From Selaginella moellendorffii (taxonomy: Eukaryota; Plantae; Lycopodiophyta), in NCBI RefSeq assembly GCF_000143415.4, contig NW_003314327.1:458775-522774 (forward strand): a DNA stretch of 64,000 bases. The letters run 5' to 3'. Numbering within the stretch: position 1 is the stretch's first letter; each line of letters starts with the position of its first letter. The notes beneath the pieces were generated by a model, which saw only the letters and a program-made list of their open reading frames with translations, was not told the DNA's origin and did not search any database. The position numbers and the translations under genes are program-made. Shown here piece by piece: positions 11,197 through 60,073 of this stretch.

Positions 11197-11893
11197 CTCC
11201 CCTATCAAGCCCTAACAAAACCCCTAAAAATGCAGAATTTTCGGCGGGAAAATTAAAATTATAAAATGCAAACCAAAGAACTTCTATCAAAGGGGAGATT
11301 TTCGTTTTCTTCGTCACTAGAACGAAGAGCGACGATGTCAGCGCACATTCTTCTCGGAAGGTACAAATTCGTGAAGAGTTTTTTCTCTTCTTCTTTACGT
11401 TTTCGAATCTGGGGGCTATGGATTGAAGTAAAGCTCGACTTGTATCACTACAGAGTGGCTTCTTTTGTTTATCGAGACTTCACGGGCTGGAGTGCTCTCT
11501 GGTTGTTCCTCTGGGAGTACAGGAAATAGAACACGGCAAGACTGAATCGAGCCGAAGCTCAGAGTTTTGTTCTCTTCCTCGGGTGAAAAGAAACGCACTG
11601 ATGATGCTTTCTGTTGGACCTTTTTTTTTTTGTACAGAAACTCGAAGTGCCTTGATCCCAGAGGAGACGCTCATTTGATCAAGTCAAGGTAACTACTCGA
11701 CGAACTCATTCTATAAAGAGCTCGCAAAATGAAGCCTGTTACATTGCAACATATATGGTTGTTTGGTTCATTGTTTGCATAATTCAAATGCAATACTGCA
11801 TATTGTTTGCTTTCCACGCGGTTGCTTGCTCTCAAGTGGATGACTGCAGCAAACGTTTCGATTTTATTGCTTTATCTTTATGCTGTTTGAGCA

Positions 11894-14235
11894 GAAGGCG
11901 ATTCATATTGTCTATCTCGGAGATTTGGACGCGACTCTTCACTGCGGTCCCAATGTTGTCACCGACTCGCATTACCAGCTGCTAGAAAAAATCCTCGGAA
12001 GGTAAAATCTTCATTCTCGGAGACGTTCCATAACAGCTTTTTGATTTTGCTGGAATTTATGCAGCTCTGAAGCTGCAAAGGCGTCTTTGACTTACAGCTA
12101 TCGCCATGGATTCAATGGCTTTGCTGCGTCACTTAGAAGCGAAGAAGCCGCCCGCATCTCTCATAAGCTCCACGTCAAAATTGCTAAGTTCGCGTTTTGA
12201 TATGGCCAATGTTATATCCGTCTTTCCGAGTCAGACACACAAACTGCACACGACCAATTCCTGAAGCTTTTTGGGCTTTGAGGAGGACGGTGGCAAGAAT
12301 GCCCAGTCGCTATATGGTGACTACGAAAGCCAGTCATTGCGGAGAAAGGCAAGATACGGTGACGACATTATAATCGGAATGCTTGATTCCGGTACGTGGT
12401 TTGCGACTGGCCACTGGACACACACAACGTCCACAGCCGCGGGCCGGTTTGTGGAAAACGCGAGCTGGTCCGGGTGCGCAGCGGCGCACCAAACTCTCGC
12501 ATTGCAGCGTACAAAGTTTACTGGGGCGAAAAATGTCCAAGCGAGAGCGTGTTGACGCGGGAATACACGACGGCGTGGATGTTTCTCAGTCTCGCTTGGC
12601 AGATCATTTTCCAGCCACTACATCTCGGATCCCATCGCCATCGGTTCCTTCCATGCAATGCAGAGAGGCATCATTGCGGCAGGGAATGAGTATTTCCCCG
12701 GCACTGAAACAAATGCGCCACCTTGGATCGTCACCGTCGCCGCCAGCACCATCTCTCGCAGTTTTACGTCGCGAATCTCTCTCGGCAACAACCAGAGCTT
12801 TGCAGTGAGTAAACCTTTGGTTCTACCTTCTTTTCCTTGTTCTTTGTGTAGGCTTCACTTCTTTTTTTTCTTATGCTTTGATATTATAGGGCTTGAGCCT
12901 GACAAGCGATGGTATCCTCTTTTGTCGAGTCTGGACGTTGGCATTCCCAACTCAAGCTTTAGTACAAGGTACGTATTCCAATGCTTGACAAAGTATTGAG
13001 ACACTGTTTACACTGCAGTGCGCTAGAGGAATGTGTGTCGGGATCCTTGGATTCAACACTAAACCCACACCAGTGATGGGATTATTCTCTTCGCAGGGCC
13101 CCAACCGACATTCTCAAGGTATGTAATTTGCATGATTTATTGATTTATTTATCTATTCTTTTTTCTTCTAGCCTGATATGGTGGCTGCTTTGGCAAACAA
13201 TACGCAATATGGTATTATGAACTTCCATGTCTTTTCCGCGTGTCTCCGGGATCGATGCACTCCTCAAGGCATACCGTCCCAAATGTAATCCAGCGGCTAT
13301 TGAAGAGGTGTGAAAACTCCTTTCGCTGGAAATTTATTGTTAGTAAGAAAACAAAAGAGAAAAGGGCTCAATCTCCAAGGGCAGAGAAGAAGCAAGAGTA
13401 AAAGAATGTTGTGTATTGATAAAAAAAACGATGGAATGGAGATAAAAATCCATAATTCAGATTCCCCCTTTTGAAAGGCTAGCAGTTCTAAGTGCTAGCA
13501 TATACTATATGTTGTGCATGATTTAATCTATGGCTCTAATGTAGCCCTGGGTTCAAAGTCAGAGTCCCTTGAGCCTGGGTTTTAGGTTAATACAGCTATC
13601 AACTCAACAATCGTAACTATGTGCTTTCCAGAAGAAAACAATCGATTCTTTTCTCTTGTTTTGCAACAGGTTTTGTCACTGATAACTCTGGAGAGCCGAT
13701 CAAAGACACAGCATTGCTCCCCACCACCCCTTTCAACTTCGGTGGAGGCCACGTCAATCCAAACGCGGCTGCTCACCTGGGCCTCGTCTACGATAGGCGC
13801 CCGACTTCACGGAATTTCTGTGTGGATTGAGGCAGGAAAGACGAAACCGCAACGGTATGTATATCACAAAGTTTTCAGAGCAAGCCATCTTCTCCACAAA
13901 TTTACAAAGATCATCTAAAGTGCTCATGAACTGCGTTGATGTCTCCACTTTCGCGAACTTGAAACATACGACGACGCATCCCTCCATCGCGATCTCTTCT
14001 CTCAAAGGCAAGAGAACCATCCACCGGCGAGTGACAAACGTAGACGACGACGCTACCACGTACCGAGCAAGCGTGGAGTCTCCGGACGGTGTTTTGGTAT
14101 CGGTGGTTCCTCCACTTCTAGAATTCGAGCGTAGAGGAGAGACAATAATAGCTTTTAAAGTTCCTCCATGCAGTCAAAGCCAACCAAAGCTGCGCTTTTG
14201 GAGCTCTCGCTTGGAGCAATGGAAAGTACAGCCCA
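11894..14235 (+). pseudogene. Subtilisin-like serine protease (S8A, I9 propeptide) pseudogene, tandem copy 1
   Basis: I9 remnant (YSYRHGFNGFAA), IIIGMLDSG, APWIVTVAASTI, FNFGGGHVNP, RRVTNV. In-frame TGA at ~12262, large deletions relative to copy 2, and a solo-LTR insertion. Confidence 0.85.
13301..13594 (-). mobile_element. Solo LTR (294 bp) inserted in subtilase copy 1
   Basis: Absent from paralogous copy 2 (compare ~16940). TG...CA termini (minus strand TGTATT...TCTTCA). 5-bp target-site duplication GCTAT at 13296-13300 and 13595-13599. Strand is tentative. Confidence 0.85.
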
Positions 14236-14867
14236 ATGGCTGTGCGGATAGAGAGCTAGCGATATAGGAGGGTTTATGGCTAGAGATTTCTAGGGTTTAT
14301 CAAAGGCGATTTACGTTTTCTCGAAGAGCGACGTTGTCAACGCACATTCGTGAAGAGATTTTTCTCTTCTTTGTTTCTTTTTCGAATCTGGGGGCAATGG
14401 ATTGAAGAATGTATCACTATAGAGTGGCTTCTTTGTCAAGAAAGCTATCGGAGTGCTCTGGTTATTCCTGGGAGTACCGAAGTAGCCAAATACGGCAAGA
14501 CTGAATCAACCCAAAGCTCAGAGTTTTGTTCTCTTCCCCAGGTGAAAAGAAACGCATTGATGATGCACTGATCATTAGCCAACCTTGACATTTTGAGATT
14601 TCTGGTGATGGTTTTGTACAGAAACTCGAAAATCCTTGGTCCAGTTTCCAGACGAGACGCTGATTTGATCAAGTCAAGGGGGTAACTAATCGACGAATTC
14701 CATTCATTCTGTAAGAGCTCCATAGATGAAGCCTGTTGCATTGCAACATATATGGCTGTTTGGTTCACCTTTTGCATGTCGCTTGCTTTCCTCGTGGTTG
14801 CTTGCTCTCAGGTGGATGACTGCATTAAAGTTCTCGATTTTCTTGCTTGACAATATGATATTTGAGC

Positions 14868-17537
14868 AGAAGGCGACTCATATTGTCTATCTCGGAGATT
14901 TGGACGCGACTCTTCACTCCGATCCCGATGCTGTCACCGACTCACATTACCAGCTGCTAGAAAACATCCTTGGAAGGTATAATTTTCATTCTCGGAGACG
15001 TTCCATAACAGCTTTGTTTTTGTTTTCTCTTGTGAATGTATGCAGCTCTGAAGCTGCAAAGGCGTCTTTAACTTACAGCTATCACCATGGATTTAATGGC
15101 TTTGCCGCATCACTTACAAGCGAAGAAGCCGCTCACATCTCTCGTAAGCTTCAGTTCAAGAATTGCTCAGTTCTCGTTTTGATATGTTCCGGATACCAAA
15201 TGTTATATCCGTTTTTCCTAGTCAGAATCACAAAATGCACACGACCAACTCGTGGAGCTTCTTGGGCTTTGACGAGGACGGTGGGAAGAATGTCCAGTCG
15301 TTATTTGGTGATTCTGGAAGCGAGCCACTGCGGAGAAAGGCAAATTACGGTGAAGACATTATAGTCGGAGTGATTGACACGGGTACGTGGTTTGCGTCTT
15401 ACAAACAAGTGCTATGCTCTTCTTGAAAGTTTTCACTTCCATTGCTTCTATCGCAGGAATATGGCCAGAGTCCAAGAGCTTTGCGGACGATTCACTTGCG
15501 AGCAAGGAGAGAACTTCACTTCCTCGCATTGCAACAGGTGAATTCGGTCAAACATAAAGTTGGTAAACTTTAAACTCTTTGCAGGAAACTCATCGGTGCA
15601 AGGTTTTTCGAGCCGGAAGGAAGAACCAACACGGAGATATCTTCTCCCAGAGACGCGAATGGCCACGGGACACACGCAGCTTCCACAGCCGGGGGCCAGT
15701 TTGTAGAAAATGTGGGCTGGTCCGGCTACGCAAGCGGCACCTTGAGCGGTGGCGCATCAAACTCTCGCATTGCAGCGTACAAAGTTTGCTGGGCTCGCCA
15801 GCAAGCTTTCGACTGCACAAGCGAGAGCGTCTTGGCAGCTTTCGAGGCGGGAATACACGACGGCGTGGATGTTTTCTCCGTCTCGCTTGGCACAAATTCC
15901 AGCGGCTACTTCTCGGATCCCATCGCCATCGGTTCCTTCCACGCGACGCAGAAAGGCATCGTCGTGGTGCCCGCGGCAGGGAACAATTATTCCTTCGGCA
16001 CTGTTGCAAACGCGGCACCTTGGATCATCACCGTCGCCGCCAGCACCATCTCTCGCAGTTTTACGTCGCGAGGCTCTCTCGGCAAAACCTGAGCTTTGCA
16101 GTGAGTAAAACTCTGATTCTATATCAGTAGTCTCGTTTTTTCTTCTCTTATGTTTTGATTACAGGGCTTGAGCCTGACTCACTCTCGGCAGGCGATGGTA
16201 TTCCCTTGTGTCGAGTCTGGACGCTGGCATTCCAAACTCAAGCTTTAGTACAAGGTACGCTGATGCCAAGCATGAACACATTCATAATACACCTTTTACA
16301 TTACAGTGAGCTAGAGCGATGCGTTTCGGGATCCCTGGATCCAAAGAAAGTCCGGGGCAAAATAGTGACATGTCTTGATACGCTACCTCTTGGAGGAGGA
16401 GCTCGTCAAGCTGGGATAATTTTCTACAACCGCGGCCCCCAAAGTGCTCGTCCTTTTGAAAACGCACTTTCTGCGTCTCATGTCAACAGAGCCGCGGCAA
16501 ATGCCATAAAATCGTAACTCCACAAGGTTTACTTTTTGCTCGCGTAGAAACAAGCTTGTGTTGCTTCATCTTGTAGATCTCCTGTGGCACAAATATCTGC
16601 AGCCTCCACGCTACTCAACGCTAAATCCGCACCAGTGACGGGAGCATTCTCTTCGCAGGGCCCCAATCCCGACATTCTGAAGGTATGTAAGAATTAATTT
16701 TCAAGTTCTAAAAAAAAGACTTAGTCTCTCTTCTTCTTCTTCTTCTTTCTTGTTTTCTTTTTTTTTTCTTTTCTTTTTCTTTTTTCTAGCCCGATATCAC
16801 AGCTCCAGGAGTGGACATTCTAGCTGCATACAGCCCTTTCGCAAACAATACGGAATATCGTATTTTGTCTGGAACTTCAATGGCTTGTCCGCATGTCTCC
16901 GGGATCGTTGCACTGCTCAAGGCATACCGTCCCGAATGGTGTCCAGTGGCTATCAACTCGGCAATCGTAACTACAGGTAAAACGCAATGTGCTTTCAGGA
17001 GAAAATCGGATTTTTTTTTTCTCGTTTTGCAAAAGGTTTTCTCACTGATAACTCTGGAGGGCCGATCAAAGACGCAGCATTGCTTCCCGTCACCCCTTTT
17101 AACTTCGGTGCAGGCCACGTCAATCCAAACGCGGCTGCTCATCCGGGCCTCGTCTACGATGCCAAGGCGCCCGACTTCACGGACTTTCTGTGTGGATTGA
17201 GTCAAGAGAGACGATACATCTCGACTTTCGCGAACTGTGCCATACGACGACGCATGGCTTCCAACAATCTCAACTATCCCTCCATCGCGATCTCGTCGCT
17301 CAGGGCAAGGGAATCGTCCACCGGCGAGTGACAAACGTAGACGACGACGCTACCACGTACCGATCAAGCGTGGAGGCTCGTGTTTTGGTATCGGTGGTTC
17401 CTCCAGTTCTAGAATTCGAGCGTAGAGGAGAGACCATAGCTTTTAAAGTTCGCTTCCAGGCAGTGAAAGCTTCCAACCAGAGCTACGCTTTTGGAACTTG
17501 GAGCAATGGAAAGTACAAAGTGAGGAGCCCGAATAAA
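14868..17537 (+). pseudogene. Subtilisin-like serine protease (S8A) probable pseudogene, tandem copy 2
   Basis: Catalytic motifs IIVGVIDTG, HGTHAASTAGG and LSGTSMACPHVSG are all present. A 1-nt deletion at ~16086 (GGCAAAACCTGA versus GGCAACAACCAG in copy 1), a TAA at ~16515 and a frameshift at ~17303 disrupt the frame. Confidence 0.85.
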
Positions 17538-19680: not shown

Positions 19681-21405
19681 ATGGAATTAAAGTGTTTGGC
19701 TCTGGCTGCCTTCCTTTTCATCGCTTATGTTGCTGCAGATGGTTAGTCATGTAGTTTCCAAGGTTTTCCATGTAAACCAATGTTTTAAAACCTTTTTCAC
19801 AGATTTTCCATTCCCTCTTAGCGAGGCACACCAAGCGCCTGACTTGATTAAAGATTTGGATTACATTGTTGTGGGTGGCGGAGCTGCAGGATGTGCATTG
19901 GCTACAACACTTTCACAGAATTTTACTGTTCTTCTGCTTGAGCGAGGTGGCTCCCCTTACAATAACCCGCTGTTTATGAGAGAGGAGAATTTTATGCTTG
20001 GTTTACTTGACGAAGGAACACAAGGCTTTGTCAGCACAGATGGTGTTGCTAATTCAAGAGGGCGAGTTTTGGGTGGGGGGTCATCGATCAATGGGGGATT
20101 TTGGGACCGTGCATCAGCCCAAGAAATCAAACAGATCGGACTTGACCCTGTTAAAGCCAATGCTTCCTACATTTGGGCCGAGAATGTGATTGTTTCCCTA
20201 CCAACTTTAGGACCTTTCCAGACAGCTTTCCACAAGGGGCTGGTTGAAGCCGGAGTGACACCGGATCTCGGTGCTACATACGAGCACTCTGTGGGGACCA
20301 AGACCGGAGGAACCTTGTTTGATGAGAATGGCCAGCGCCGACCGTCTTCCAACTTGATCGCCGCTTATGCTAACCCGCAAAACCTTCAGGTCCTGCTGAA
20401 TGCTCAAGCCGTGAAGATCCATTTCGATGTGTCTGGTAAGAATCAATCTTGGTTATATAGTTATATAATGACTGTTCTGCAGATTCTGGAGCTCCAAGGG
20501 CGATGGAAGTTGATTTCATCGACCGAAATGGAGGTCTTCATACTGCTTTTCTCAAACAAGATTCGGCCAGTGAGATTATCCTCTCCGCCAGCGCAATCGG
20601 AACTCCTCATCTTCTTATGTTGAGCGGTGTTGGGCCGGCTGATCACCTCAAGCAGTTCAACATCAATGTCGTCCTCAACTTGCCTGTTGGCAAGAACATT
20701 GCAGACAATCCAGCCACAAGAGTCTACGTGCCATCGCCTCTGCCTGTTGAGTCTGCGCTCGTAAAGGTGGCGGGTATCACCCCCTTCGGCAGCTATATCG
20801 AGTCCCTCAGCGGAGTCCAGAACCTTCAGGGCAGCGTCATCTTCCAAAAGGTGGCGGGCCCAAAATCCACCGGAGAAGTGGTCCTTAGTAACGACAGCTT
20901 GGACATTACCAACAATCCCGTCATCACTTTCAACTATTACAACAACTCAGATGATCTAGCAACCTGCATTGGCGGTCTTAACATCATGGAGAAATTCCTG
21001 CTGTCCAAGACAATGACCCCTTTTGTGAGCGGCATGCAAGCTATGCCATCGGGCAACGTGCTTGGCTTGCCGATCCGCAAGTTTACGTCACAGGAGGTTA
21101 TCAACGCGACACTGAGTGCATACTGCAAGGTTAATGTTGGTACAATGTGGCATTACCATGGTAGCTGCCGGGTTGGCCAGGTGGTGGACTCCCAGTACAA
21201 GGTGTTGGGTGCGGAGAGGCTCAGGATTGTCGATGGATCTGTGTTTGACTTCTGCCCAGGTACCAATCCCCAGGCAACATTTGTAATGATGGGAAGGTAT
21301 GTGCAGAATTCTTATCCGTAGTTTTTACAATCTTTTTGTTTGCAAATGGACAGGTACATGGGATTGGAGATTATAGATGCGCGGCTCAATAGCACATCCA
21401 CCTGA
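19681..21405 (+). CDS. Secreted GMC oxidoreductase (HOTHEAD/mandelonitrile lyase-like), copy 1
   Basis: Signal peptide; DYIVVGGGAAGCALATTLS, GRVLGGGSSING, GTPHLLMLSGVGP, WHYHGSC, PGTNPQAT. Confidence 0.92.
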
Positions 21406-21589
21406 AAAAAGCTTAATGCAAACTTTTTCATGTTTCATCAAACCTTTAATTTAGAAAACGCGGGTAAAATGTTATCTTCTGGCATCACAAATTCGAACGT
21501 CAAAGTTCAGCACAAAAAGATCTACTCAATGATCGACTAGCTTGGCACCATTCTACATTGCCGCTCAACTCTTTTTCTCTTTCTACAGG

Positions 21590-22420
21590 AACCTGCAAGA
21601 GGATGCGAGAGTTCTGGGAACAGATCGTGCAACACGGGGCAAACGGATTCTCTCGTGCATTGACACCACCGATCCAAATGTGTGGCTGCCTGGACCATGC
21701 CCACGGCGTATTCTACATCTTCTCACACACACGGGATTTGCTCTAAGAAGTAGCGAGCGATGTGACGTGAAATGCACTGGTGAACGTTTTGGCACAAGAT
21801 GGACAGCTTGTACTGGTGGTCTGCTGGAATTCCATTTGAGACGTTGTGTCTTATTTTTATTTCACCATATTCCGTGACGGGTATATTGGGTATTTGGCAC
21901 GACTTGTTTGATTTGATGCCGCACGAAGAGGTCACTTGGAACGCACTGGTGTCTCGATTATCTGATATTTTAAGGTCCTTTGAGTATGCCAAAGCATTCA
22001 ATGCCACTGGAATGTTGCGGCAACGACGACAGAAAATGCCCAGATGGAAAATCTAGAGGCTGCTGCTTAAACTTTCGAGAGGATGCCGCGGCAGAACGTG
22101 ATCTCTTGCTTGATGCATATACTTACAAGCGGGGCCTAATATTCTTTGGACATTACCAACAATCCTGTCATCACTTTCAACTATTACAACAACTCAGATG
22201 ATCTATTGACCTGCATTGGCGGTCTTAACATCATGGCCATCCTAACTGCAAGGATTTACGCAATCACGAAGCAAAGCTCTACTTCAACAGCATGCCTCAA
22301 CAAAACGAGAGCTTTCAAACCACGATCAAGCTCTGGAAATCTTCCAGAGAATGCCCCGCGATATATATGTTGTGTCCTGGATGACAAGCTTTCAAGAAGT
22401 TTCTTTGAAGAGATGACGTA
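21590..22420 (+). pseudogene. Degenerate PLS-type PPR fragments with an embedded GMC exon fragment
   Basis: Broken motifs LFDLMPHEEVTWNALVS, EAKLYFNSMPQQNE, SRSFFEEMT. 22146-22237 is a near-exact copy of GMC1 ~20899-20988. Confidence 0.55.
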
Positions 22421-22616
22421 GAATTTTTTTTAAAAAAAGTGGAAAGAAGCTGTTATAGCATAGATATAAAATCCAATACTTAGTTCTTTTTTGGCATGCA
22501 AGTTACATGCATTATTAGCACTTTTTCTTTATTTATAGGTTGGGAAGTAATTAAGGTTTTTTTTTACGCATTATAAAATAATGCCCAAAAGAACACAAAG
22601 CTTGTGAATCACAGGA

Positions 22617-24342
22617 ATGGGGATCCTTGGCTTGTTCTTCGCAGTTTTCATTGCTTGTGCTGCTGCAGCGGGTAATTATTTAAAAGTTATTTCTTATTTC
22701 TTGTTTACTGACTGTGTCTTTGCTGAAAACTAAATGCAGAATTCCCCTTTCCTCTCCAAGAAGCTCACAATGTCGAGTTGACGCAAGACTACGATTACAT
22801 CATTGTGGGAGGCGGTGCCACAGGATGTGCACTGGCCGCAACACTGTCAGAGAACTTCCGCGTCCTATTGCTCGAGCGAGGAGGCTCCCCTTACAGCAAC
22901 CCACTGCTCATGAGGGTGGAGAATTTCTTCCTGGGGTTCCTGGATGATGGAGCTCAGAACTTCGTCACCACTGAAGGCGTTGCCAATGCTCGGGGGCGCG
23001 TTTTGGGTGGTGGATCATCGATTAACGCCGGTTTCTGGGACCGTGCCCCGGCTTCGGAGATTGCGCAGCTCGGACTCGATCCCGTCAAGGCTAATGCCTC
23101 GTACACCTGGGCAGAGAATGCGATTGTCTCGCTCCCTGTATTGGGACCTTTCCAGAGCGCTTTCCACAAGGGGCTTGTCGAGGTTGGAGTGACACCGGAT
23201 CTTGGTGCCACTTACGAGCACTTCGTGGGAACCAAGACTGGGGGCTCGCTGTATGACAGCAATGGCCAGCGCCGGCCGTCTTCCAACTTGATTGCCGCAT
23301 ATGCCAATGCGACCAACCTTCAAGTTGTGCTCCATGCAACAGTTACAAAGGTCCAGTTCGATGGTAAGTTGTTTTCAAACTCTTTTCTTGCTTTGAAATC
23401 ACAAAATTCTTGTTCTTTTGTATCGAAGATGGTCTTTCCAAGCCCACGGCCATTGGAGTTGAATTCGTCGACGAGCTCGGACAAATCCACGCCGCGTTCC
23501 TCAAGGCTGACGAAAGGAGTGAAGTGATACTTTCCGCCAGTGCCATCGGAACTCCCCACCTCCTGATGATGAGCGGCGTTGGGCCGGCGGAGCACCTCAA
23601 GCAGAAGGGCATTCCCGTCATTCTTGATCTTCCAGTCGGCAAGAACATTGCGGACAATCCCGCCACCCGACTGTACGTCCCCTCTATGTCGCCTGTGGAG
23701 CCGGCTCTCGTACAGGTGGCCGGAATCACGCCCTTTGGCAGCTACATCGAGGCCCTCAGCGGTGTCCAGAACCTCCAGGGCAGCGTCATATTCCAAAAGG
23801 TGGTAGGACCAAAATCCACGGGAGAGGTTCTCATTGACAGCATGGATATCAGGCAGAACCCCTCTGTCACCTTCAACTATTACAAGGATCCCGAGGACTT
23901 GCAGATCTGTGTGGGCGGCCTGAATGTGATCGAGGAGCTCCTTTTGTCCAAGAGCATGACGCCGTTTGTCAATGGTATGCAAGCAATGCCATCTGGTAAC
24001 ATTCTTGGCCTCCCGATCCGTAAATTCTACCCCAAGGAGATGATTGATATGGCCCTGGGTGCGTATTGCAAGGCCAACGTTGGTACTATGTGGCATTACC
24101 ATGGTAGCTGCCGGGTTGGCCAGGTGGTGGACGCCCAATTCAAGGTTTTGGGCACAGAGCAGCTCCGGATTGTGGATGGCTCCGTGTTCGACTTCTGCCC
24201 GGGGACCAACCCACAGGCAACTTTCATAATGACGGGAAGGTATGCAAAACTGATTTCATTTTTGGCAATTCTTCATTGCTGCATTTGTTTGTTTCATAGA
24301 TACATGGGAGTGGAGATTACTTCCCGGCGTTTGACTGCATGA
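22617..24342 (+). CDS. Secreted GMC oxidoreductase (HOTHEAD/mandelonitrile lyase-like), copy 2
   Basis: Signal peptide MGILGLFFAVFIACAAAA; DYDYIIVGGGATGC, GRVLGGGSSINAG, WHYHGSC, PGTNPQAT. Same exon layout as copy 1. Confidence 0.92.
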
Positions 24343-24811: not shown

Positions 24812-26056
24812 TCAGTTGATCCTGCTACAATCCCTTCTGATTTCCCCGCTCGTCCCTGTTTTGACGCCGATGCTGCCCATTTTGTCCATGGCGTCAGCAA
24901 ACGCATTAAAGAAGCGCTGGCGCTTCTTTGAAAACAAGCGGACAAGCTTCCTGGTCCGCCTGTCCGAGTAAAGTTCCTGGTCCGAGGTTACCAACCCTCT
25001 GCCCGCCAACAGATTCTTGTAGTACGCGTTGTCAAACTCGAAAGGGGTCACTGGATCAAACGGCTCCACCAGGTTTGGATTTCCGCCCCGGATGGGGCAC
25101 GATTTCTTGAGGTCCGACGCGAAGCTGGAGCTCATTGTTGGATCCATCCTGTTACTGCTGCTGAAGTTGTAGAGCCGGCTGCTGAATTGATCGCAGTGTG
25201 CAAAGCCAAATGTGTGAGCTCCTGGAGTTTTTTGTTTGTGTAGTTTGGATCATGGAAGAAGAAAAGTGAGTGATTGATGTTTTGGTGACTTCTGCGCATA
25301 CCTGAGAGTGACACCAGGTCGACGAGATTGAGACCCTTGGTCGCAAAGTTTTTGAGAAGTTGGTTTACGGAGAATTCCGCGCCGGGGAGATTGGCAGTGG
25401 CGGCTTCCGCTCTGGAGATTCTCCCGTCGCGTCTTCCTTTCTTCACTTGCCATGCTGGTCCTCCAGTCTGACCAACATAAAAAAAACGCATTTTGTTTTT
25501 GAGTCCCCTTTCGTTTTGGAGCTTTGGGCATGAATGGAAGACCTCCAAAAGGCTTTAAAGAAGGGAAGTTTCGCTTACCAGGCCAACAAAGTCGCGCGTT
25601 AGTATGGCGAGAACATCGGCGCAAGAGACCACTCCCGGGCACTCGGCTTCCACGGCTTTCTTGGCTTTCATCACCGAATCAAATGCGTCTCCGGCCAGGG
25701 ATTTGTTGATGTCCGCGTCCTTCTCGGCTCTGTTTGCCGGCGTGGATGCTAAGGTCACGGAAGCATCACACCCCTGGATGGAGGAATTCATGGAAATCCG
25801 GACAAGTTTATCAGGGATGAGAGAAAAAAAACTAGATTTTTTTCTCTCCACTTGCCTCGACGAAGCAGTCGTGGAAGAAGAGACGGACTGTGGCAGCGGC
25901 AGATGTTGGTGCTTGCTTAAATTTGTCGAGAGCTACTCGCTTGACGATGGATTCCACTCGCGGGCAGCTCCTGCCGTAGAAGCCAACCGAGAGTTGGGCC
26001 GAGGAAGAGGAAACGCAAACTGTAATCACTAGCAAAAGTAGCAATGTTTTATCCAT
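24812..26056 (-). CDS. Class III secretory heme peroxidase
   Basis: Signal peptide then QLSVGFYGRSCP, RLFFHDCFVE|GCDASV, CPGVVSCADVLA, GRRDG, DLVSLSG|AHTFG, FDNAYYKNL, GEIRRDCSRIN. Alternative ATG at 26074. Confidence 0.95.
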
Positions 26057-26699
26057 GAAATCGTAGCGAAACATGGAAGCTGCACGGGATACGAGAAATC
26101 AGATGTTTAGAAATGATATGTGACTTTAAAAACAAACCTGGGGATCACTGAAGAACACGGCTGAGCTCTAGAAAAAAGGAAGGACGGACAGTTTCATTTC
26201 CAGAAAGAAGTATAGGGAAAAGAAGCTGTCCCAAAGTTATAACGCTGCTGGAAAGAAAAAGAAAAAGGAAAAAAATGAAAAGAGAGATTTGGCAAAGTTT
26301 AGGGGAATGTTGCTGGACAGCACAGACTTTGCTTTCAAGCCTACACATGAAACCGATGACAAGAAGAAAATTTTGTATCTCTCCCGAAGAGCCACGAGCT
26401 GGCACACTACAACACAGGCTAGAAGCTGAGTAGGAAGAAGCCGATAGATTGACAAAAGAGAAACAAGGAATAAAATATCGGGTTTTGATCCCTGCTAAGT
26501 ATGTATACAAACGAAGCAGACAAACCAGGATAATACTTGTAGAATACGATATTCTCCTTGTGATCGATCCCCTTACCGAATCGTGCAAAAGCGATTCTTA
26601 ACATAAGAGAAAGATATTTAACTTAATGCAGTTCCAATTTTCCAATCTTGTTCAATCTATGGACAAGATGGTGCACATTCCAATGACTTTGCAATGTCT

Positions 26700-26790
26700 A
26701 CTTCCGGAACATTATCACCAGCGTGTATGCCCAGAATGTGTTTCCTGGAATTCTATGGTGACGGCGTATGCGGGTGCTCAAGCAAATGGC
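26700..26790 (+). pseudogene. Isolated PLS-type PPR motif remnant
   Basis: PECVSWNSMVTAYA matches the S/P-motif consensus VSWNxMIxAYA. Confidence 0.45.
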
Positions 26791-27075
26791 AGCCCAGGAT
26801 TTCGTGGACACTCGACTTCACGCTCTGTCGGCTCGAGCCCAGTGCTTTCTCTGAAGGACGGACGGCCAAATCGCATCTTGGTCGTGGGAAGCTCTCTCAT
26901 CAACATTTAAATGTGTTTGCCAGTCACCTTGTATCAAATATAAAGAAAAAAATTTACCTTGATCTTGCTACTACTTCTCGAGCAGGGCAACAAAAATACG
27001 GCTTCTCAGCTCCCCGCTTGAAACGCTTGCACCTGTTCGTATTTGTTAGAACTAAGCTGAACATGCACACAACCA

Positions 27076-27147
27076 GGGCAGGTAGCTCAGTGGTAGAGCA
27101 CCTGGCACCGGTGTAGGAGGTCCTGGGTTCAATCCCCGGCCTGTCCA
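27076..27147 (+). ncRNA. tRNA-like Pol III cassette in the 5' LTR of the TRIM
   Basis: GGGCAGG/CCTGTCC acceptor stem, GCTC-AGTGGTA-GAGC D arm (A box), CTGGG-TTCAATC-CCCGG T arm (B box). Anticodon arm is aberrant (CCTGG-CACCGGT-GTAGG, no U33). Confidence 0.85.
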
Positions 27148-27280
27148 GATCCATTTTCCAACATGGTATCGGAGCTATGGTTGGATGGCCTGTGGTAGGC
27201 ATGGACTGGGCAGGTAGGGATGTGTGGTGTGTTCAGCTTAGGGGGGAGTGTTAGAACTAAGCTGAACATGCACACAACCA

Positions 27281-27352
27281 GGGCAGGTAGCTCAGTGGTA
27301 GAGCACCTGGCACCGGTGTAGGAGGTCCTGGGTTCAATCCCCGGCCTGTCCA
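27281..27352 (+). ncRNA. tRNA-like Pol III cassette in the 3' LTR of the TRIM
   Basis: Identical to 27076-27147. Confidence 0.85.
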
Positions 27353-28222
27353 GATCCATTTTCCAACAGTATTGACAAACCCAGAACACGGAACTGCTTT
27401 CTCAAGAGCTAATTCTTCAGGCTCAGGAAGCCTCAATTTATCAACAAATGCCAACGTTCCATCAAGTTCTGCAAAGTTCTGCAAAGTTACTGACACTCAC
27501 ATTTGCTACAGAAACAGTGAATGAAGTTAGCACGGATAAACACCTTTAGATAGAAAAATGCTTACCACCCACAACGTCTAGGTGACAAACATGTGGCAAA
27601 ACGTTGGTACTAGAATATCCCAACAGCTCCTCAAACATCATGAACCGAGAAAGGATCCCATCTTTCCATGCAATATGGCTCGCTTCCGTTTGGTTGATGA
27701 CACTGAGATCTGTACTCCAGCCCGTATTGCTCGTCACACCTGGCCGCACTAAATCAACGGCCTTTTCGTTACAAAACAGAACCCCGGAGAGCAGCTCCTC
27801 CATAGTAGTAGCCAACAAAGCTTCCAACTCATACTCCCAAATAGCGGCCAAGTATGCTTCCCTTTGCCTTAACTACATTCACCACCAAAGCCTCCAGCCT
27901 CGCGGAGTTGTGGGTTGAGAGAACGGCTGCATCTTGCTGAACGTCAAATGCCCATATCTTCCTCTCAGGTAACCGATACAAAGCTTTGGACCTATTCATG
28001 ACTTCAGCTGCCAGAAAGTCCACCAAGTATCTGGAAATGAGCTTCATGTAATCTCCTCCGAAACGTTAAGGTAAGCAGAGGCGATTGTTCCCTCGGTAGC
28101 AATCCTCATGGATATGCCGCGTGTTCATGTTCATTCAAGCCAAGAAAATCCATGAGCCGCGCATCATCGCCGCCTTCGAGCTCAACGAGGAATGACGCTA
28201 CCTCTTTCAGGTTGCTACCGGT

Positions 28223-28432
28223 ATGCTGCATTTGAAAAGGATAAGCTGCGGTGCCTTGCTGCTCTCGGTCAGCTGCTATTTGCTTCTAGTTCTTGTTCTA
28301 CTAGTCTTTCCGGAGCACAGGATCAGCATTTCGTCCGATCTCAGGCGGCCGCTCTTAAACAACCTGGTACGAGACGAGCCCGGTGGCCAAGTCAGTTTCG
28401 ACAGGTGCTGGGGGAAAAGAGTCTATGTCTAC
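28223..28432 (+). pseudogene. 5' fragment of a GT47 (exostosin/xyloglucan galactosyltransferase-like) gene
   Basis: Type II membrane anchor followed by DRCWGKRVYVY, resembling the C-x-G-x-x-I/V-Y-V-Y start of plant GT47 domains; similarity stops abruptly. Confidence 0.45.
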
Positions 28433-29132
28433 AATAGTACAATCTTCCAGTCCACTAACGTACCTTACTATGTCCATGGTGTAAGGTAGGATAAGCATGT
28501 CAAACGCAGCTGGTTGCTTGGCCTGGACATACAGCTGAAGCAGCCGTGGAGTGAGCACTGTGTGGTACACCATTGCCTGTGTGGTGCCAACACCGAACGG
28601 AGACTTTGCCAGGCAAGTCTTGAACTCCTCCGCAGTGAAGGGCCCGCTGAACTCCATTCGCCAGGCTTCTTGTCTGTATAGAGGTATTCCATGAATGATT
28701 CAGAAACCTTGACCAGGACATGGAAATAGCTCGCTTCCTCCAAAGCAGACCTCTACTGTGTAACTTCGAGATTCACAGCCTTCAAATCCAAACAGTTCCA
28801 CTTGTCCGCCATTCAGCTTGCCCTTAAAAAAGCCTACCAGACTCGGAAGTGAGTTTGCAGACAGCACCAGTTCTTGAGTCGACTCCTCGAAGACCACAAT
28901 GGGTCTCTAGGGAACTGGTGTCCAACAATGTAGACAGACCACCAGGGCCTCCGGACAAGCATGTGTCTGGCAAGAGAATCCCGTGAAGAGCAGATCGCTG
29001 GTGGCAGCGACACAAAACGATTGTACACCTTTCACACCCGAAAGCTGCCATATCCACAGTTTATTTATAGCACCGTTGAAACCCTAAACTTTGCTCTTTA
29101 ACATTGAAGAAAAAGAAAGCTTAAAAAGACTA

Positions 29133-29205
29133 TGGAGTTGAGGGGCATCGATCCCCTTACCTATCGCATGCAAAGCGATCGCTCTACCATCTGAGCTACA
29201 ACCCC
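29133..29205 (-). tRNA. tRNA-Ala(TGC)
   Basis: GGGGTTGTAGCTCAGATGGTAGAGCGATCGCTTTGCATGCGATAGGTAAGGGGATCGATGCCCCTCAACTCCA: 73-nt cloverleaf, G3-U70 pair, downstream T-run terminator. Confidence 0.96.
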
Positions 29206-29269
29206 TCATTTATATTTATCTATGTCTAACACGAATCAGAGATTAATTGATCAATAGTGTTTTCTTTAA

Positions 29270-29385
29270 ATTCCGTTTTTATTCGCTAAGTATGTATACA
29301 AACGAAGCAAAGGAAAACATTTTCACCAGACGTGGATAAGGTTGAGTAGCACCAAGAGCAACGCAACAACAAGACGTATCACATA
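29270..29385 (-). repeat. Diverged duplicate of the SYP5 last-exon end and 3' UTR
   Basis: Aligns by eye with 29972-30085 (ccgtttttattcgcta...ttcaccagacgtggataag...accaagagcaacgc). A shorter third copy is at ~26492-26518. Confidence 0.75.
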
Positions 29386-30032
29386 CAACCTAATATAAAA
29401 GTACTATTTAACAGATAATATTATATTCATCCTAAGGAAACAAGCTGGTATGTGTGGCTTCCTAGTGTCGCAAGGAACACTATTGTCAATCTCCGTCTGA
29501 ATGTCGAGAAGGGTGAGCCGGTCTGCCTTGCTAGTTGGAGGGGAAAGCTCTATATGGTGTGGCTCAACGTGGAACACAAGTGCACAATTGTGGAGATTTC
29601 TGTGGAGACTGGTGAGGTGATAGCATTTAATCAGTAACTCGTAAACAGAGCTACTTCCGTGGTCAAGCTGGTAACTATTTGAATATTGAAGGATATTATG
29701 GAAGGGTACGTAGGTTTTTCTCATATGATCTAGATGCAAGTACTTGGACTGAAAGATTACAAGCCTGTCTCAGTTCCCAGGCTTCTGTAGATTGAATTAT
29801 AAATTTATAAGAAAATTAAATCCAGACAGAAAAATATGTGGAATGTAGCCTTAAGTGGGTGGTAAATTCCATCTGGAAAACTCGCAGTGCCTCCTCCGGA
29901 CAATATTAACAGTGTTTACAAAGGATTCTCTTTAAACTTATAGATGCAGATAGAAGTAGGACCTGTACACAATCCCGTTTTTATTCGCTATGTATGTATA
30001 CAAACGAAGAAAGCACGCGAAGGAAAAGACTT

Positions 30033-52424: not shown

Positions 52425-52943
52425 GGTAGTCAAAACTAGACTTGATTGTGATTAAGAAATATTATAAATTTGAATATTCTAACAAATTTTATCTATCACA
52501 GGTGTCTAATTAGTTGTCTAATTAGTGCAACTCTAAGAAATGAATTTGTGAGGGCCAAGTGTACGGCTACGATGCCGTATACTAATATTAGCGTAGTGGA
52601 TTTTGGTAGCCGTCGGATTGGTTTCAATCCGGACCACTCGCTCTTGTATATAAGCTAGGGTTTTTGGGCTAATTGATATGCACATTTCTGTATTTCCTTT
52701 CCATATTCCATGCACTCACATTGGTGGAGTTGAGGGGCACCTTTGATTGTTCCTGGGGAGTGCTTGGATTTGGGATTTCGGTTTAGATCTAGCTTTTGAT
52801 CTAGCTTTTTCCATTTTCTTTCTTTTGTTTTTTCCTTTCAGGATTTTGGTTTAGATCTACCTTTTTGCATTGTCTAGATCTACCATTTCTTTCCAGCTTT
52901 TTGTCATTTCTCTTCTTTTGCTCTTTCTTTTTCATTCATCTTC

Positions 52944-53876
52944 ATGGCTGATCCGCAATCTCCTCCTTTGACTCTAGAGCAGCAGTTGGTTCAATTGCTT
53001 GATGCTATGCGCTTGCAATTGAACAATCAAACTCAGTTGATGGCGGCATTCACGGCACATGGTACAACTCCTCTTGTTTTTGGTGCCAATCCTTGCGTTT
53101 GGCCGGAGTTCTTTCGTGGGAATCCTAGGGATGATGTGTACCATTGGTTCGATCACTTCACGGTGATTGCCACATATCATTCTTGGGATGATGCTCGACG
53201 TTTGCGTGAGTTCCCCACATGTCTCCAAGGGACGGCATTGCAGTGGTACAATGGATTGAGCGCAGCTACTCGTGGCGATTGGAGTGTTCTTCTGGACGTC
53301 TTCAAACGCGCCTTTGGACACGCCGACGATTGTGATGATGCCTTCCAACAATTGCATCGTCTTCGCCAAGGGCCATCTGAGTCGGTGATGCAATTTGGCG
53401 TTCGTTTCCGAAGTCTTTTGCTTCGTGCGGAGCCAAATATGTCGGAGCGGATCAAGCTAGGAATGCTGTGGCCAGCACTTCGTCAAGATCTTGTCGGACT
53501 TGTGCATGCACTTGCTCCTGCCACTCTTGACGATGCTCTTCGCTTGGCACAACGTTATGAGACGTCGCCTCTTCCACTTCTTGCTACACGTCCTTCAGCT
53601 CCACTTCCTATGAGTGATGGTTCTGTTCCCATGGAGGTTGATGCTGCTGCTACTCGAGTCCAAGGACAAGGGCGAGGACGTGGTCGTGGCCGTGACGTTC
53701 GTTGCTGGGCATGTGATGAAGTTGGTCATACTTATCGGCGTTGTCGGCGCTTTCCAGATTGGCGACCTCCATTTCCTGGGTGGAGACCTTGGCGTCAGCA
53801 ACGTCCCGTTGGTGCTGCTGTGGTGGAAGGTTTGGATCCCGAGGTGCATTCGGGAAACGAGGAGTCGCGCAAGTAA
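52944..53876 (+). CDS. gag: Retrotransposon Gag with CCHC zinc knuckle
   Basis: LQGTALQWY, LRQGPSESV, PMEVD, CWACDEVGHTYRRC. Confidence 0.92.
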   Translation: MADPQSPPLTLEQQLVQLLDAMRLQLNNQTQLMAAFTAHGTTPLVFGANPCVWPEFFRGNPRDDVYHWFDHFTVIATYHSWDDARRLREFPTCLQGTALQWYNGLSAATRGDWSVLLDVFKRAFGHADDCDDAFQQLHRLRQGPSESVMQFGVRFRSLLLRAEPNMSERIKLGMLWPALRQDLVGLVHALAPATLDDALRLAQRYETSPLPLLATRPSAPLPMSDGSVPMEVDAAATRVQGQGRGRGRGRDVRCWACDEVGHTYRRCRRFPDWRPPFPGWRPWRQQRPVGAAVVEGLDPEVHSGNEESRK

Positions 53877-56800: not shown

Positions 56801-57339
56801 ATGTCACAGGGGTGCAGAGTTCTATTGGTGCTTCACCATATAAACTTCTATATGGTCATGATCCAATATTACCAACAGAGCTGGGTTTACCTTCGCGATT
56901 GCCACGAGCTCCTGATGCTAGATCATGGGATCAATATTTGACAAGCATTCTTCCACTTGTCCGAGCGGAGTCTGCTGAACACTTAGGCCGTGTACAAGTG
57001 GGACAACAACGGCGCTACAATTCCCATCATCGTCCACCTGCAGAGTACAAAGTGGATGATTTGGTGTTAGTCCGTTTTCCCCATCTTACGGTACGTGGTT
57101 TATCTAAGGGGCTCCTTGCGCAGTGGAAAGGACCGTATCGGGTGTTGCGGCAAGTTGGACCACAAGTTTATGAGGTTCGGCATGACGTTCAGCAGGCCGA
57201 TCCTCCGGAGATTGTGCATGTGCAGCGGTTAAAATGCTTCATACAAAGGGATCAGGAGCAGTTAATACCGTCTACAGATCCACCGATGCCTCCTCCTGAT
57301 GTTCCTCCAGATCCCGGCCCATCTACAAGAGAACCCTGA
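53852..57339 (+). CDS. pol: Pol polyprotein (protease, RT, RNase H, integrase) with one frameshift at ~56428
   Basis: LVDTGS, ILGMDWL, RFCIDYRPLN, MPFGLNNAPATFQ, FIDD, VDASD, HHCC zinc finger, SDNGPAF, YHPQSDGLVER, WKGPYRV. A 1-nt loss in MG(P)FP splits the integrase. Confidence 0.92.
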
Positions 57340-57620
57340 CGGCCTTCCATTATTACGAGAGGAGGGGATGATGTGAGGGCCAAGTGTACGGCTACGATGC
57401 CATATACTAATTTTTTTGCGTAGTGGATTTTGGTAGTCGTCGGATTGGTTTCAATCCGGACCACTCGCTCCTGTATATAAGCTAGGGTTTTTGGGCTAAT
57501 TGATATGCACATTTCTGTATTTCCTTTCTATATTCCATGCACTCACAAATTGAAATATTTTGTTATTTCCTAAATAATTAATTATTTAAACTTAAACAAT
57601 AAAAATAATAATGTAAAGTT

Positions 57621-57622
<2 letters not shown>

Positions 57623-57707
<85 letters not shown>

Positions 57708-57722
57708 TATATATATATATAT
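57623..57722. repeat. (TA)n microsatellite
   Basis: About 100 bp of near-perfect TA repeat. Confidence 0.95.
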
Positions 57723-59347: not shown

Positions 59348-60073
59348 TGTGAGACACAAAATCCCTAGGCCCCAAAGTGGAGCCGGAAAGGGTGCCACGT
59401 GGTAGTGGCCAAATCGAAAGCTAAACGAGCATAACACGTTTGGACTAAAAGCTTCGACTTGGAAGGTCGAGAGCGGGAGTGGAACTCCCAACAAAGTGCT
59501 TGAGGAGCAAGCACGAGGCAACCAATAAGCAAAGCTCCAAAAAGGGACCCAAAAAGGACCAACACATGACACGTGGAAGTATCCGAGATGGAGTCCGAGG
59601 CGGACCCGAGTTGGAGTCCGAGATGGACCCGAAGTGGAGTCCGAGATGGACCCGAAGTGGAGTCCGAGATGGAGTCCGAAGTGGAGTCCGAGATGGAGTC
59701 CGATATGGAGTCCAAGATGGACCCGAAGTGGAGTCCGATATGGAGTCCGAGATGGACCCGAAGTGAAGTCCGATATGGAGTCCGAGATGGAGTCCGAGAT
59801 GGACCCGAAGTGGAGTCCGATATGGAGTCCGAGATGGAGTCTGAGATGGACCCGAGATGGAGTCCGAGATGGAGTCCGAGATGGAGTTCGAGATGGACCC
59901 GAGATGGAGTCCGAGATGGAGTTCGAGATGGAACCGAGACCGGGACCGAAACCGAGATCGAGACCGAGACCAAGACGGAGTCCGAGTCCGAATCCGGGAC
60001 CGAGACCGAGTCCGAGTCCGAGTCCGAATACTAATATAGGCAGTTGGGTGAAAGCCCAAAGCGATCGTCCCCC

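What the first reader, a model, noticed from the sequence alone, without database searches (positions are those of the whole stretch)
27044..27368. 325-bp TRIM whose LTRs each carry a complete tRNA-like Pol III gene (tRNA analogue of Cassandra)
Seen: two identical 120-bp LTRs, PBS, PPT, an 85-bp non-coding interior and a 5-bp TSD (GTATT). 72 of the 120 LTR bases fold as a tRNA with intact A box (TAGCTCAGTGG), B box (GGTTCAATCC) and paired acceptor, D and T stems. Established: LTRs normally hold Pol II promoters, and Cassandra TRIMs are the known exception, carrying 5S rRNA/Pol III cassettes. Inference: this is a SINE-like Pol III promoter inside an LTR chassis, mobilised in trans by an autonomous LTR element, and identical LTRs indicate a recent insertion. 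From memory, tRNA-bearing TRIMs were recently reported under the name Helenus, so novelty must be checked.
Basis: partly seen in the sequence, partly recalled or inferred. Interest (0 to 1): 0.92.

Follow-up and report, generated by a model that had tools for sequence, protein, structure and literature searches.

The report
Known Helenus tRNA-carrying miniature retrotransposon
This is a real, intact 325-bp miniature LTR retrotransposon with a tRNA-like unit in each terminal repeat, but it is a near-perfect copy of Helenus-1_SMo, a family published in 2024 from Selaginella moellendorffii, so it is correct but not new.

Summary
There are two identical 120-bp LTRs (27044-27163 and 27249-27368) with TG..CA ends. 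The 85-bp interior carries a PBS and a PPT. A 5-bp target-site duplication, GTATT, flanks the element. Each LTR holds a 72-nt tRNA-like unit with A and B boxes, followed by TTTT.

It is not new. Kojima 2024 (PMC10886601) describes Helenus-1_SMo from Selaginella moellendorffii with the same dimensions (LTR 120, interior 85, total 325, TSD 5). The published consensus matches this copy at 324 of 325 bases; the one difference is a CpG-to-TpG change at 27228.

Three things are added here:
- Contigs from two public runs skip exactly 330 bases (the element plus one GTATT). The same contigs lack a 60-nt GT..AG intron of the minus strand, so this is an expressed empty site.
- The insertion sits antisense in the last coding exon of a lineage-specific gene. 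It splits a motif that is continuous in the S. moellendorffii homologue SELMODRAFT_428724.
- The LTR layout fits U3 (about 32 nt), R (tRNA-like unit plus TTTT) and U5 (6 nt).

Pol III transcription remains untested, here and in the literature. Earlier follow-ups of this scan reported four other copies of the family in this genome. Novelty: already known. Interest: low.

The parts
27039..27043 (.). Target-site duplication GTATT, left copy
   Evidence: the empty-site contigs keep one copy
27044..27163 (+). 5' LTR, 120 bp, TGTTAG...CCAACA
   Evidence: identical by block-wise comparison to the Helenus-1_SMo-LTR consensus printed
27044..27075 (+). Putative U3 (32 nt upstream of the tRNA-like unit); inferred
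   Evidence: position relative to the tRNA-like unit; inference
27076..27147 (+). tRNA-like unit 1 (ARAGORN Arg-CCG; A33, G.G at 31-39); core of the putative R
27083..27093 (+). A box TAGCTCAGTGG
   Evidence: read directly
27126..27135 (+). B box GGTTCAATCC, 32 nt after the A box
   Evidence: read directly
27154..27157 (+). TTTT, putative weak Pol III terminator 7 nt after the tRNA-like unit. With its twin in the 3' LTR it is the only run of four or more T on the + strand of the element
27164..27248 (+). Non-coding interior, 85 bp; 84/85 to the consensus Helenus-1_SMo-I (T at 27228 where the consensus has C, a CpG>TpG change)
27164..27175 (+). Primer-binding site TGGTATCGGAGC (initiator-Met type, one base from the Cassandra PBS)
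27208..27217 (+). GGGCAGGTAG, a 10-nt exact repeat of the 5' end of the tRNA-like unit. In the predicted fold of the putative genomic RNA the region around it (27201-27215) pairs with the 3' acceptor strand and trailer (27139-27154), enclosing the PBS
27228..27241 (+). Interior arm of a 14-bp stem with the start of the 3' LTR (27257-27270); the PPT and LTR start lie in its loop
   Evidence: (I2)
27240..27248 (+). Polypurine tract AGGGGGGAG
27249..27368 (+). 3' LTR, identical to the 5' LTR
27281..27352 (+). tRNA-like unit 2
27359..27362 (+). TTTT, putative end of the genomic RNA (end of R)
   Evidence: inference
27369..27373 (.). Target-site duplication GTATT, right copy
27369..27505 (-). Host gene, last coding exon, part upstream of the insertion (...NFAELDGTLAFVDKLRLPEPEELALEKAVPCSGFVNT). 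Contains a 10-nt tandem duplication (about 27455-27474) that shifts the frame in this allele
26954..27043 (-). Host gene, last coding exon, part downstream of the insertion (NRCKRFKRGAEKPYFCCPARE...; stop TAA 26956-26954)
27506..27565 (-). 60-nt GT..AG intron of the host gene, removed in the X4 and X6 contigs

Best explanation
This is a full-length, essentially unmutated copy of Helenus-1_SMo, the tRNA-bearing terminal-repeat retrotransposon in miniature (TRIM) of Selaginella moellendorffii.

How it most likely works:
1. The element has no genes. It borrows Gag, reverse transcriptase and integrase from an autonomous LTR retrotransposon.
2. Reverse transcription is primed at the PBS by a tRNA (initiator-Met type). 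Plus-strand synthesis starts at the PPT.
3. Integration made the 5-bp GTATT duplication.
4. Its RNA is proposed to come from the internal A/B-box Pol III promoter of the tRNA-like unit in the 5' LTR. The proposed layout is U3 about 27044-27075, R about 27076-27157 and U5 = CCAACA.
5. Most transcripts would stop at the TTTT in the 5' LTR, giving a tRNA-like RNA of about 82 nt. A fraction would read through and stop at the same TTTT in the 3' LTR. That gives a genomic RNA of about 287 nt with R at both ends.

This copy inserted recently, antisense, into the last coding exon of a lineage-specific gene.

Shown: anatomy, family identity, empty site, host exon. Inferred, with rough odds: trans-mobilisation (about 0.9), Pol III origin of the RNA and the U3/R/U5 borders (about 0.5).
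For: Family identity:
- Kojima 2024 gives Helenus-1_SMo as LTR 120, interior 85, total 325, TSD 5, from assembly GCA_000143415.2.
- The consensus printed equals the window at 120/120 for each LTR and 84/85 for the interior.

TRIM hallmarks:
- Searches show the LTRs, PBS, PPT and TSD.
- The tRNA-like unit is supported.
- Only tRNA matches were found in 26000-30000, and no 5S match.

Insertion event:
- Contigs in X4 and X6 join 27038 to 27369, skipping 330 nt, with 5 letters fitting both sides. They also lack the GT..AG intron 27506-27565.
- No canonical splice dinucleotides are possible at the 330-nt skip.
- The S. moellendorffii protein SELMODRAFT_428724 reads CSGFVN-MNRCKHFKRGAEEPYFCCPAHE continuously, where the window has CSGFVNT | element | NRCKRFKRGAEKPYFCCPARE.

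Dispersed copies:
- LTR-containing contigs with at least four different flanks and sequence variants were seen in three runs.
- Scan notes report a 311-bp copy, a 374-bp copy, a solo LTR and a broken copy in this genome (not checked by me).

Pol III model:
- The A and B boxes are intact while the anticodon arm is degenerate (A33, G.G).
- The single T4 run lies 7 nt after the unit.
- Cassandra LTRs likewise carry Pol III promoters and terminators (PMC7215508).
Against: - No experiment or read-level data show a Pol III start at about 27076. All runs available were assembled contigs, which cannot show ends, strand or level.
- The one presumed-RNA contig spanning 27147-27316 (X6) could come from Pol II read-through of a host gene carrying another copy, or from DNA in the library.
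- A T4 in the 5' LTR should terminate many Pol III transcripts before the PBS, so full-length RNA may be rare.
- No autonomous partner was found in the window. The Ty3/Gypsy element at 52598-58284 shares nothing with the element.
- The comparison with the consensus was done block by block by eye plus one 26-nt pattern search, not by a formal alignment.
Confidence: 0.9

Rival explanations
1. The element is an ordinary TRIM whose tRNA-like segment is an inert relic. Its template RNA would be made by Pol II, from a cryptic LTR promoter or by read-through from neighbouring genes, and the A and B boxes would play no part in mobility.
For: Pol III activity has not been demonstrated for any Helenus (the paper's discussion). 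The TTTT in the 5' LTR would stop Pol III before the PBS. [quoted passage not shown]
Against: Only 32 nt lie upstream of the tRNA-like unit, and they contain no TATA-like motif. Read-through RNA would lack the R-U5...U3-R ends needed for strand transfer. The A box, B box, D, T and acceptor stems are intact while the anticodon arm has decayed, which is the pattern expected if the promoter rather than the tRNA is under selection. At this locus the host gene runs antisense to the element.
Confidence: 0.3
2. The two units are genuine tRNA-Arg(CCG) genes duplicated in tandem, and the surrounding features are coincidental.
For: ARAGORN and Rfam both call a tRNA. A terminator-like TTTT follows each unit.
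Against: The units have A33 in place of U33 and a G.G mismatch closing the anticodon stem. PBS, PPT, TG..CA ends and a 5-bp TSD are all present. A precise 330-nt empty site exists, and the insertion splits a conserved coding motif. The paper reports that only some bivalve and fungal Helenus families pass tRNAscan-SE isotype consistency.
Confidence: 0.02
3. The element is a dimer of a tRNA-derived SINE mobilised by a LINE.
For: It has a tRNA-derived Pol III promoter, is short and is dispersed.
Against: There is no A-rich, simple-repeat or LINE-derived 3' tail. PBS and PPT sit between two exact terminal repeats. The fixed 5-bp TSD and TG..CA ends are integrase hallmarks.
Confidence: 0.01

Closest known systems
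Helenus-1_SMo (Kojima 2024, Biology 13:119, PMC10886601), Selaginella moellendorffii
   Same: Same dimensions: 120-bp LTR, 85-bp interior, 325 bp in total, 5-bp TSD. The sequence matches the consensus at 324/325. It has the same tRNA-like unit and comes from the same species, judged by the host-gene homologue.
   Different: Nothing structural; this is a copy of that family. The paper does not give three things for the plant family: this copy's empty site, its position in a coding exon, and the PBS assignment.
Cassandra TRIMs (5S rRNA-derived Pol III unit in the LTR; PMC7215508)
   Same: A non-coding TRIM chassis with a small-RNA-gene-derived Pol III promoter and terminator inside each LTR. The PBS is nearly the same (TGGTATCAGAGC against TGGTATCGGAGC). 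Both are plant elements.
   Different: The captured gene is a tRNA (type 2 promoter, A and B boxes), not 5S (type 1, A box/IE/C box). No 5S match was found. The element is much shorter (325 bp against 565-860 bp). Cassandra transcription has been shown experimentally; Helenus transcription has not.
tRNA-derived SINEs (SINE2)
   Same: A tRNA-like head with A and B boxes, non-autonomous, short, spread by reverse transcription.
   Different: SINEs use LINE machinery, have a 3' tail and variable TSDs, and have no LTR, PBS or PPT. Here the tRNA-like unit is followed at once by its own terminator, with no SINE body or tail. This LTR therefore looks more like a captured tRNA gene than an inserted SINE (inference).
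Canonical plant TRIMs (for example Katydid; survey by Gao et al. 2016, PMC4717578)
   Same: Size class, PBS/PPT, 5-bp TSD and residence in genes. Gao et al. counted 8 TRIM subfamilies and 10,158 copies in S. moellendorffii.
   Different: Canonical TRIM LTRs have no small-RNA gene. Whether one of Gao's eight subfamilies is this family could not be checked, because no sequences are held.

Membership tests
Helenus (TRIM with tRNA-derived LTR; TRIMp3) | Two direct terminal repeats with TG..CA ends flanking a short non-coding interior | tested here: met
   120-bp LTRs 100% identical, 85-bp interior
Helenus (TRIM with tRNA-derived LTR; TRIMp3) | PBS next to the 5' LTR and PPT next to the 3' LTR | tested here: met
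   TGGTATCGGAGC at 27164, AGGGGGGAG at 27240-27248
Helenus (TRIM with tRNA-derived LTR; TRIMp3) | tRNA-like sequence with conserved A box (TRGCY..YGG) and B box (GGTTC) inside the LTR | tested here: met
   (52.7 bits against 29); motifs read; criteria quoted
Helenus (TRIM with tRNA-derived LTR; TRIMp3) | 5-bp TSD (plant and fungal Helenus) | tested here: met
   GTATT on both sides; the empty site keeps one copy
Helenus (TRIM with tRNA-derived LTR; TRIMp3) | Transcription by RNA polymerase III from the LTR | not testable with these tools
   Only assembled contigs were available. The paper itself says this is unvalidated
Helenus-1_SMo (the specific family) | High identity to the published consensus over its full length | tested here: met
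   Block-wise comparison gives 324/325. One search confirms the single mismatch at 27228.
Helenus-1_SMo (the specific family) | Host is Selaginella moellendorffii | tested here: met
   The interrupted gene's best homologue among 1.84 billion representatives is SELMODRAFT_428724, collinear over aa 58-639. Scan notes name the same species
Cassandra | 5S rRNA-derived sequence in the LTR | tested here: not met
   no 5S match at E up to 1 in 26000-30000, only tRNA
tRNA-derived SINE | Single unit with a 3' A-rich or LINE-derived tail and LINE-type TSDs | tested here: not met
   no run of four or more A in the element; LTR, PBS and PPT present
Functional tRNA-Arg(CCG) gene | Canonical anticodon loop (U33) and fully paired anticodon stem | tested here: not met
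   A at position 33, G.G at 31-39. tRNAscan-SE was not available

The most novel reading that the evidence does not exclude
This copy may be a very young insertion that is still segregating, either between haplotypes or between accessions. It sits in the coding exon of an expressed gene. That would be the first indication that the only known plant Helenus family is currently or very recently active. The LTR would then be a minimal U3(32)/R(tRNA-like unit plus T4)/U5(6) design that depends on leaky Pol III termination.
Probability: 0.4. Interest if true: 0.3.

Novelty: already known. Interest (0 to 1): 0.12.

Why it matters
As a discovery it does not matter much, because the family, its dimensions and its consensus were published in 2024 from this species.

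This copy is still a convenient experimental handle on a question the paper leaves open: whether Helenus LTRs really drive Pol III transcription and retrotransposition. It is intact and matches the consensus at 324 of 325 bases. It has an identifiable empty site and lies antisense in an expressed exon, so sense-strand element RNA from this locus cannot be host-gene read-through.

It is also a reminder that tRNA predictors (ARAGORN, Rfam) call these LTRs as tRNA-Arg genes, which inflates tRNA gene counts.

Tried and rejected
- Thermodynamic folding of the 72-nt unit alone does not give a cloverleaf and is no better than shuffles. The tRNA call therefore rests on the covariance model and ARAGORN.
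- No other copy or solo LTR was found in the window.
- Autonomous partner in the window: the Ty3/Gypsy element at 52598-58284 has no similarity to Helenus. The same PBS 12-mer at 61073 is not followed by gag or pol ORFs. No candidate was found.
- Host-gene function: Pfam found nothing on seven minus-strand ORFs or on the homologues P0001 and P0002. The ESM Atlas gave only a sub-threshold Peptidase_M24 lead (0.86), which nothing else supports.
- The Gao 2016 supplement holds no TRIM sequences, so overlap with its eight Selaginella subfamilies could not be tested.
- The search of earlier findings by sequence and by relatives was blank.
- The 8-nt palindrome CACCGGTG in the anticodon loop was considered as a dimerisation site. 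It was dropped: a palindrome this short is expected by chance about 0.25 times in 72 nt, and its CpG is mutated in most other copies (27109 C>T).
- The 53-nt skip 27747-27799, seen only in X4, has no canonical splice ends. I read it as an indel, not an intron.
The comparison was made in 10-nt blocks by eye, plus one 26-nt pattern search.
Exons were searched singly, by reference.

Full report
**Observation**

- Two 120-nt direct repeats, 27044-27163 and 27249-27368, are 100% identical. They begin TGTTAG and end CCAACA.
- The 85-nt interior (27164-27248) opens with TGGTATCGGAGC and closes with AGGGGGGAG, which abuts the 3' repeat.
- GTATT flanks the element on both sides, at 27039-27043 and 27369-27373.
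- ARAGORN calls tRNA-Arg(CCG) at 27076-27147 and 27281-27352.
- The Rfam tRNA model scores both at 52.7 bits (gathering score 29, E 1e-9). No 5S or other family appears in 26000-30000.
- The A box TAGCTCAGTGG is at 27083-27093. The B box GGTTCAATCC is at 27126-27135, 32 nt downstream.

The cloverleaf forms 20 of 21 pairs. Position 33 is A instead of the near-universal U, and the pair closing the anticodon loop is G.G. Free-energy folding alone prefers another structure (-27.9 against -24.8 kcal/mol, z -0.39). The unit is therefore tRNA-like, with intact promoter-bearing arms and a decayed decoding arm.

**Identity**

A full-text search for Helenus found Kojima 2024 (PMC10886601). Its section on plants states that the only plant Helenus is Helenus-1_SMo of Selaginella moellendorffii. 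That family has a 120-bp LTR, an 85-bp interior and 5-bp TSDs. Table S1 gives a total length of 325 bp and the assembly GCA_000143415.2.

The consensus in the paper's Data S1 (printed) was compared with the window in 10-nt blocks. The LTR is identical at 120/120, in both copies. The interior is 84/85. The one difference is T at 27228 where the consensus has C in a CpG. A 26-nt consensus pattern search found the site with exactly one mismatch. The element is thus a 324/325 copy of a published family.

The host species agrees. The gene that the element interrupts has, among 1.84 billion representative proteins, only three hits. The one collinear over aa 58-639 is EFJ08652.1, hypothetical protein SELMODRAFT_428724 of S. 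moellendorffii.

Four earlier follow-ups of this scan reported other copies of the same family in this genome: a 311-bp copy, a 374-bp copy, a solo LTR and a broken copy. I did not re-examine those copies.

**Evidence that it inserted here, and recently**

Logan contigs of four public runs were laid on 26200-28200.
- In two runs (X4 and X6, guessed to be RNA) a contig joins 27038 directly to 27369. It skips 330 nt, which is the element plus one TSD copy, and 5 letters fit on either side.
- The same contigs also lack 27506-27565. On the minus strand this segment begins GTAAG and ends TGTAG, so it is a canonical 60-nt intron. The contigs are therefore spliced minus-strand RNA.
- None of the six possible registers of the 330-nt skip gives canonical splice ends. 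It is an empty site, not an intron.
- These contigs differ from the window at several SNPs and two small indels. They come from another allele, haplotype, accession or very recent paralogue.

The protein homologue gives independent support. SELMODRAFT_428724 reads ...CSGFVN-MNRCKHFKRGAEEPYFCCPAHE... without interruption. The window reads ...CSGFVNT, then the element, then NRCKRFKRGAEKPYFCCPARE..., and reaches a stop at 26956-26954.

The insertion is therefore in conserved coding sequence, about 27 codons before the stop, and antisense to the gene.

Neither allele looks fully intact. In the window's allele a 10-nt tandem duplication about 90 nt upstream already shifts the frame; NFAEL is read twice, in two frames. 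The empty-site contigs lack that duplication but lack 11 nt at about 27430-27440. The 3' end of this gene may be decaying in both forms. The gene family has no Pfam domain.

Identical LTRs say little about age on their own. Zero differences in 120 bp bound the age only to roughly a million years at an assumed 1e-8 substitutions per site per year (my arithmetic; the rate is assumed). The retained CpGs and the empty site are better signs of youth.

**Dispersed copies**

In the run guessed to be DNA (X1), 88 contigs lie on the element, with several sequence variants. One example is C>T at the CpG at 27109 in most of the depth. Contigs in X1, X4 and X8 leave the LTR ends into at least four different flanking sequences (table 7). 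X8 is from a third coded organism whose flanks are about 97% identical to the window, and it carries LTR copies with 4 differences in 126 nt. The window itself holds no second copy.

**Mechanism**

Shown:
- The element has no ORF of its own origin.
- It has a PBS, a PPT, TG..CA ends and a 5-bp TSD. It therefore moved by the LTR-retrotransposon route, using proteins supplied in trans.

Inferred:
- The PBS differs at one base from the TGGTATCAGAGC of Cassandra (PMC7215508). From general knowledge, that motif is the initiator-Met PBS common to plant LTR elements.
- The same 12-mer recurs at 61073, three bases after a CA-ending stretch. It is probably this species' version of that PBS.
- The only run of four or more T on the sense strand is TTTT at 27154-27157 and 27359-27362, 7 nt after each tRNA-like unit. 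Each LTR is therefore a complete Pol III unit: promoter, body and terminator.
- This suggests U3 of about 32 nt, R of about 82 nt and U5 = CCAACA. A productive genomic RNA of about 287 nt would arise only when Pol III reads through the first T4 and stops at the second. The short tRNA-like RNA would be the main product.
- The predicted fold of that 287-nt RNA is much more stable than shuffles (-139 kcal/mol, z -5.6). Two helices stand out. One pairs 27139-27154 with 27201-27215 and encloses the PBS. The other is a 14-bp stem, 27228-27241 with 27257-27270, that presents the PPT/U3 junction in its loop. No comparative data were available to test these helices.

Pol III use is unproven here and in the paper, which says so explicitly. 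I put it at about even odds. The alternative is Pol II or read-through transcription.

The LTR has no SINE body or tail after the tRNA-like unit. For this family, direct capture of a tRNA gene seems at least as likely as the SINE-insertion origin that the paper proposes for Helenus in general (inference).

**Comparison and verdict**

- The element works like Cassandra, with a Pol III small-RNA gene in a TRIM LTR. It is not Cassandra, because it has no 5S sequence.
- It shares a tRNA-derived promoter with SINE2 but none of the LINE-dependent features.
- It meets every testable defining feature of Helenus, and it is a member of Helenus-1_SMo by sequence.

The finding is already known, and the scan has met the family several times in this genome. 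The modest additions here are the empty site, the coding-exon location and the explicit U3/R/U5 read-through model.

Noticed in passing
window 29133-29205 (-): A bona fide-looking tRNA-Ala(TGC) gene (Rfam 61 bits). It folds as a cloverleaf at MFE and lies 1.8 kb from the Helenus copy, just upstream of the host gene's first aligned exon.
   Followed up: partly
window 26954-29049 (-): The host gene is a spliced minus-strand locus homologous over aa 58-639 to the 674-aa S. moellendorffii protein SELMODRAFT_428724. It has no Pfam domain and only 3 hits in 1.84 billion representatives. One hit, P0001 (1882 aa), matches residues 59-86 of the 101-aa query ORF in 21 stretches, so the family carries a repeated motif.
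   Followed up: partly
window about 27455-27474 and 27430-27440: A 10-nt tandem duplication (GTTCTGCAAA twice on the + strand) shifts the host reading frame in the window's allele. The empty-site contigs have one copy but lack 11 nt nearby. Both forms look frame-damaged relative to the homologue.
   Followed up: partly
window 28115 and rightwards: Contigs of all four runs, including the one guessed to be DNA, match the window from 28115 rightwards. To the left of it they all continue with the same different sequence (...AAACGGCTCCAAACGCTTGCGTC), which is absent from the window. Depth there is high in X8. This is probably a duplicated fragment of a highly expressed gene located elsewhere, or a structural difference.
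   Followed up: partly
window 24812-26074 (-): Exons of a class III peroxidase-like gene (signal peptide, then FFHDCFV and later motifs in the ORF translations), immediately downstream of the host locus.
   Followed up: no
window 11530-17379 and 19841-24135: Two pairs of tandemly duplicated gene-sized units, each about 3 kb apart. The first pair is 84-93% identical. The second pair is 73-79% identical and looks GMC-oxidoreductase-like from its ORF translations.
   Followed up: no
window 52598-58284 (+): A Ty3/Gypsy LTR retrotransposon with LTRs of about 500 bp, 91% identical, and gag, protease, RT, RNase H and integrase ORFs. It is unrelated in sequence to Helenus.
   Followed up: partly
window 59570-59991: An array with 11-12 and 23-nt spacing (23 overlapping copies of a 128-nt reference) inside long ORFs on both strands.
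   Followed up: no
window 61073-61084 (+): An exact second copy of the PBS 12-mer TGGTATCGGAGC, three bases after ...GCCTACA. It may be the 5' LTR/PBS junction of another LTR element running off the window. No gag or pol domain was found downstream within the window.
   Followed up: partly
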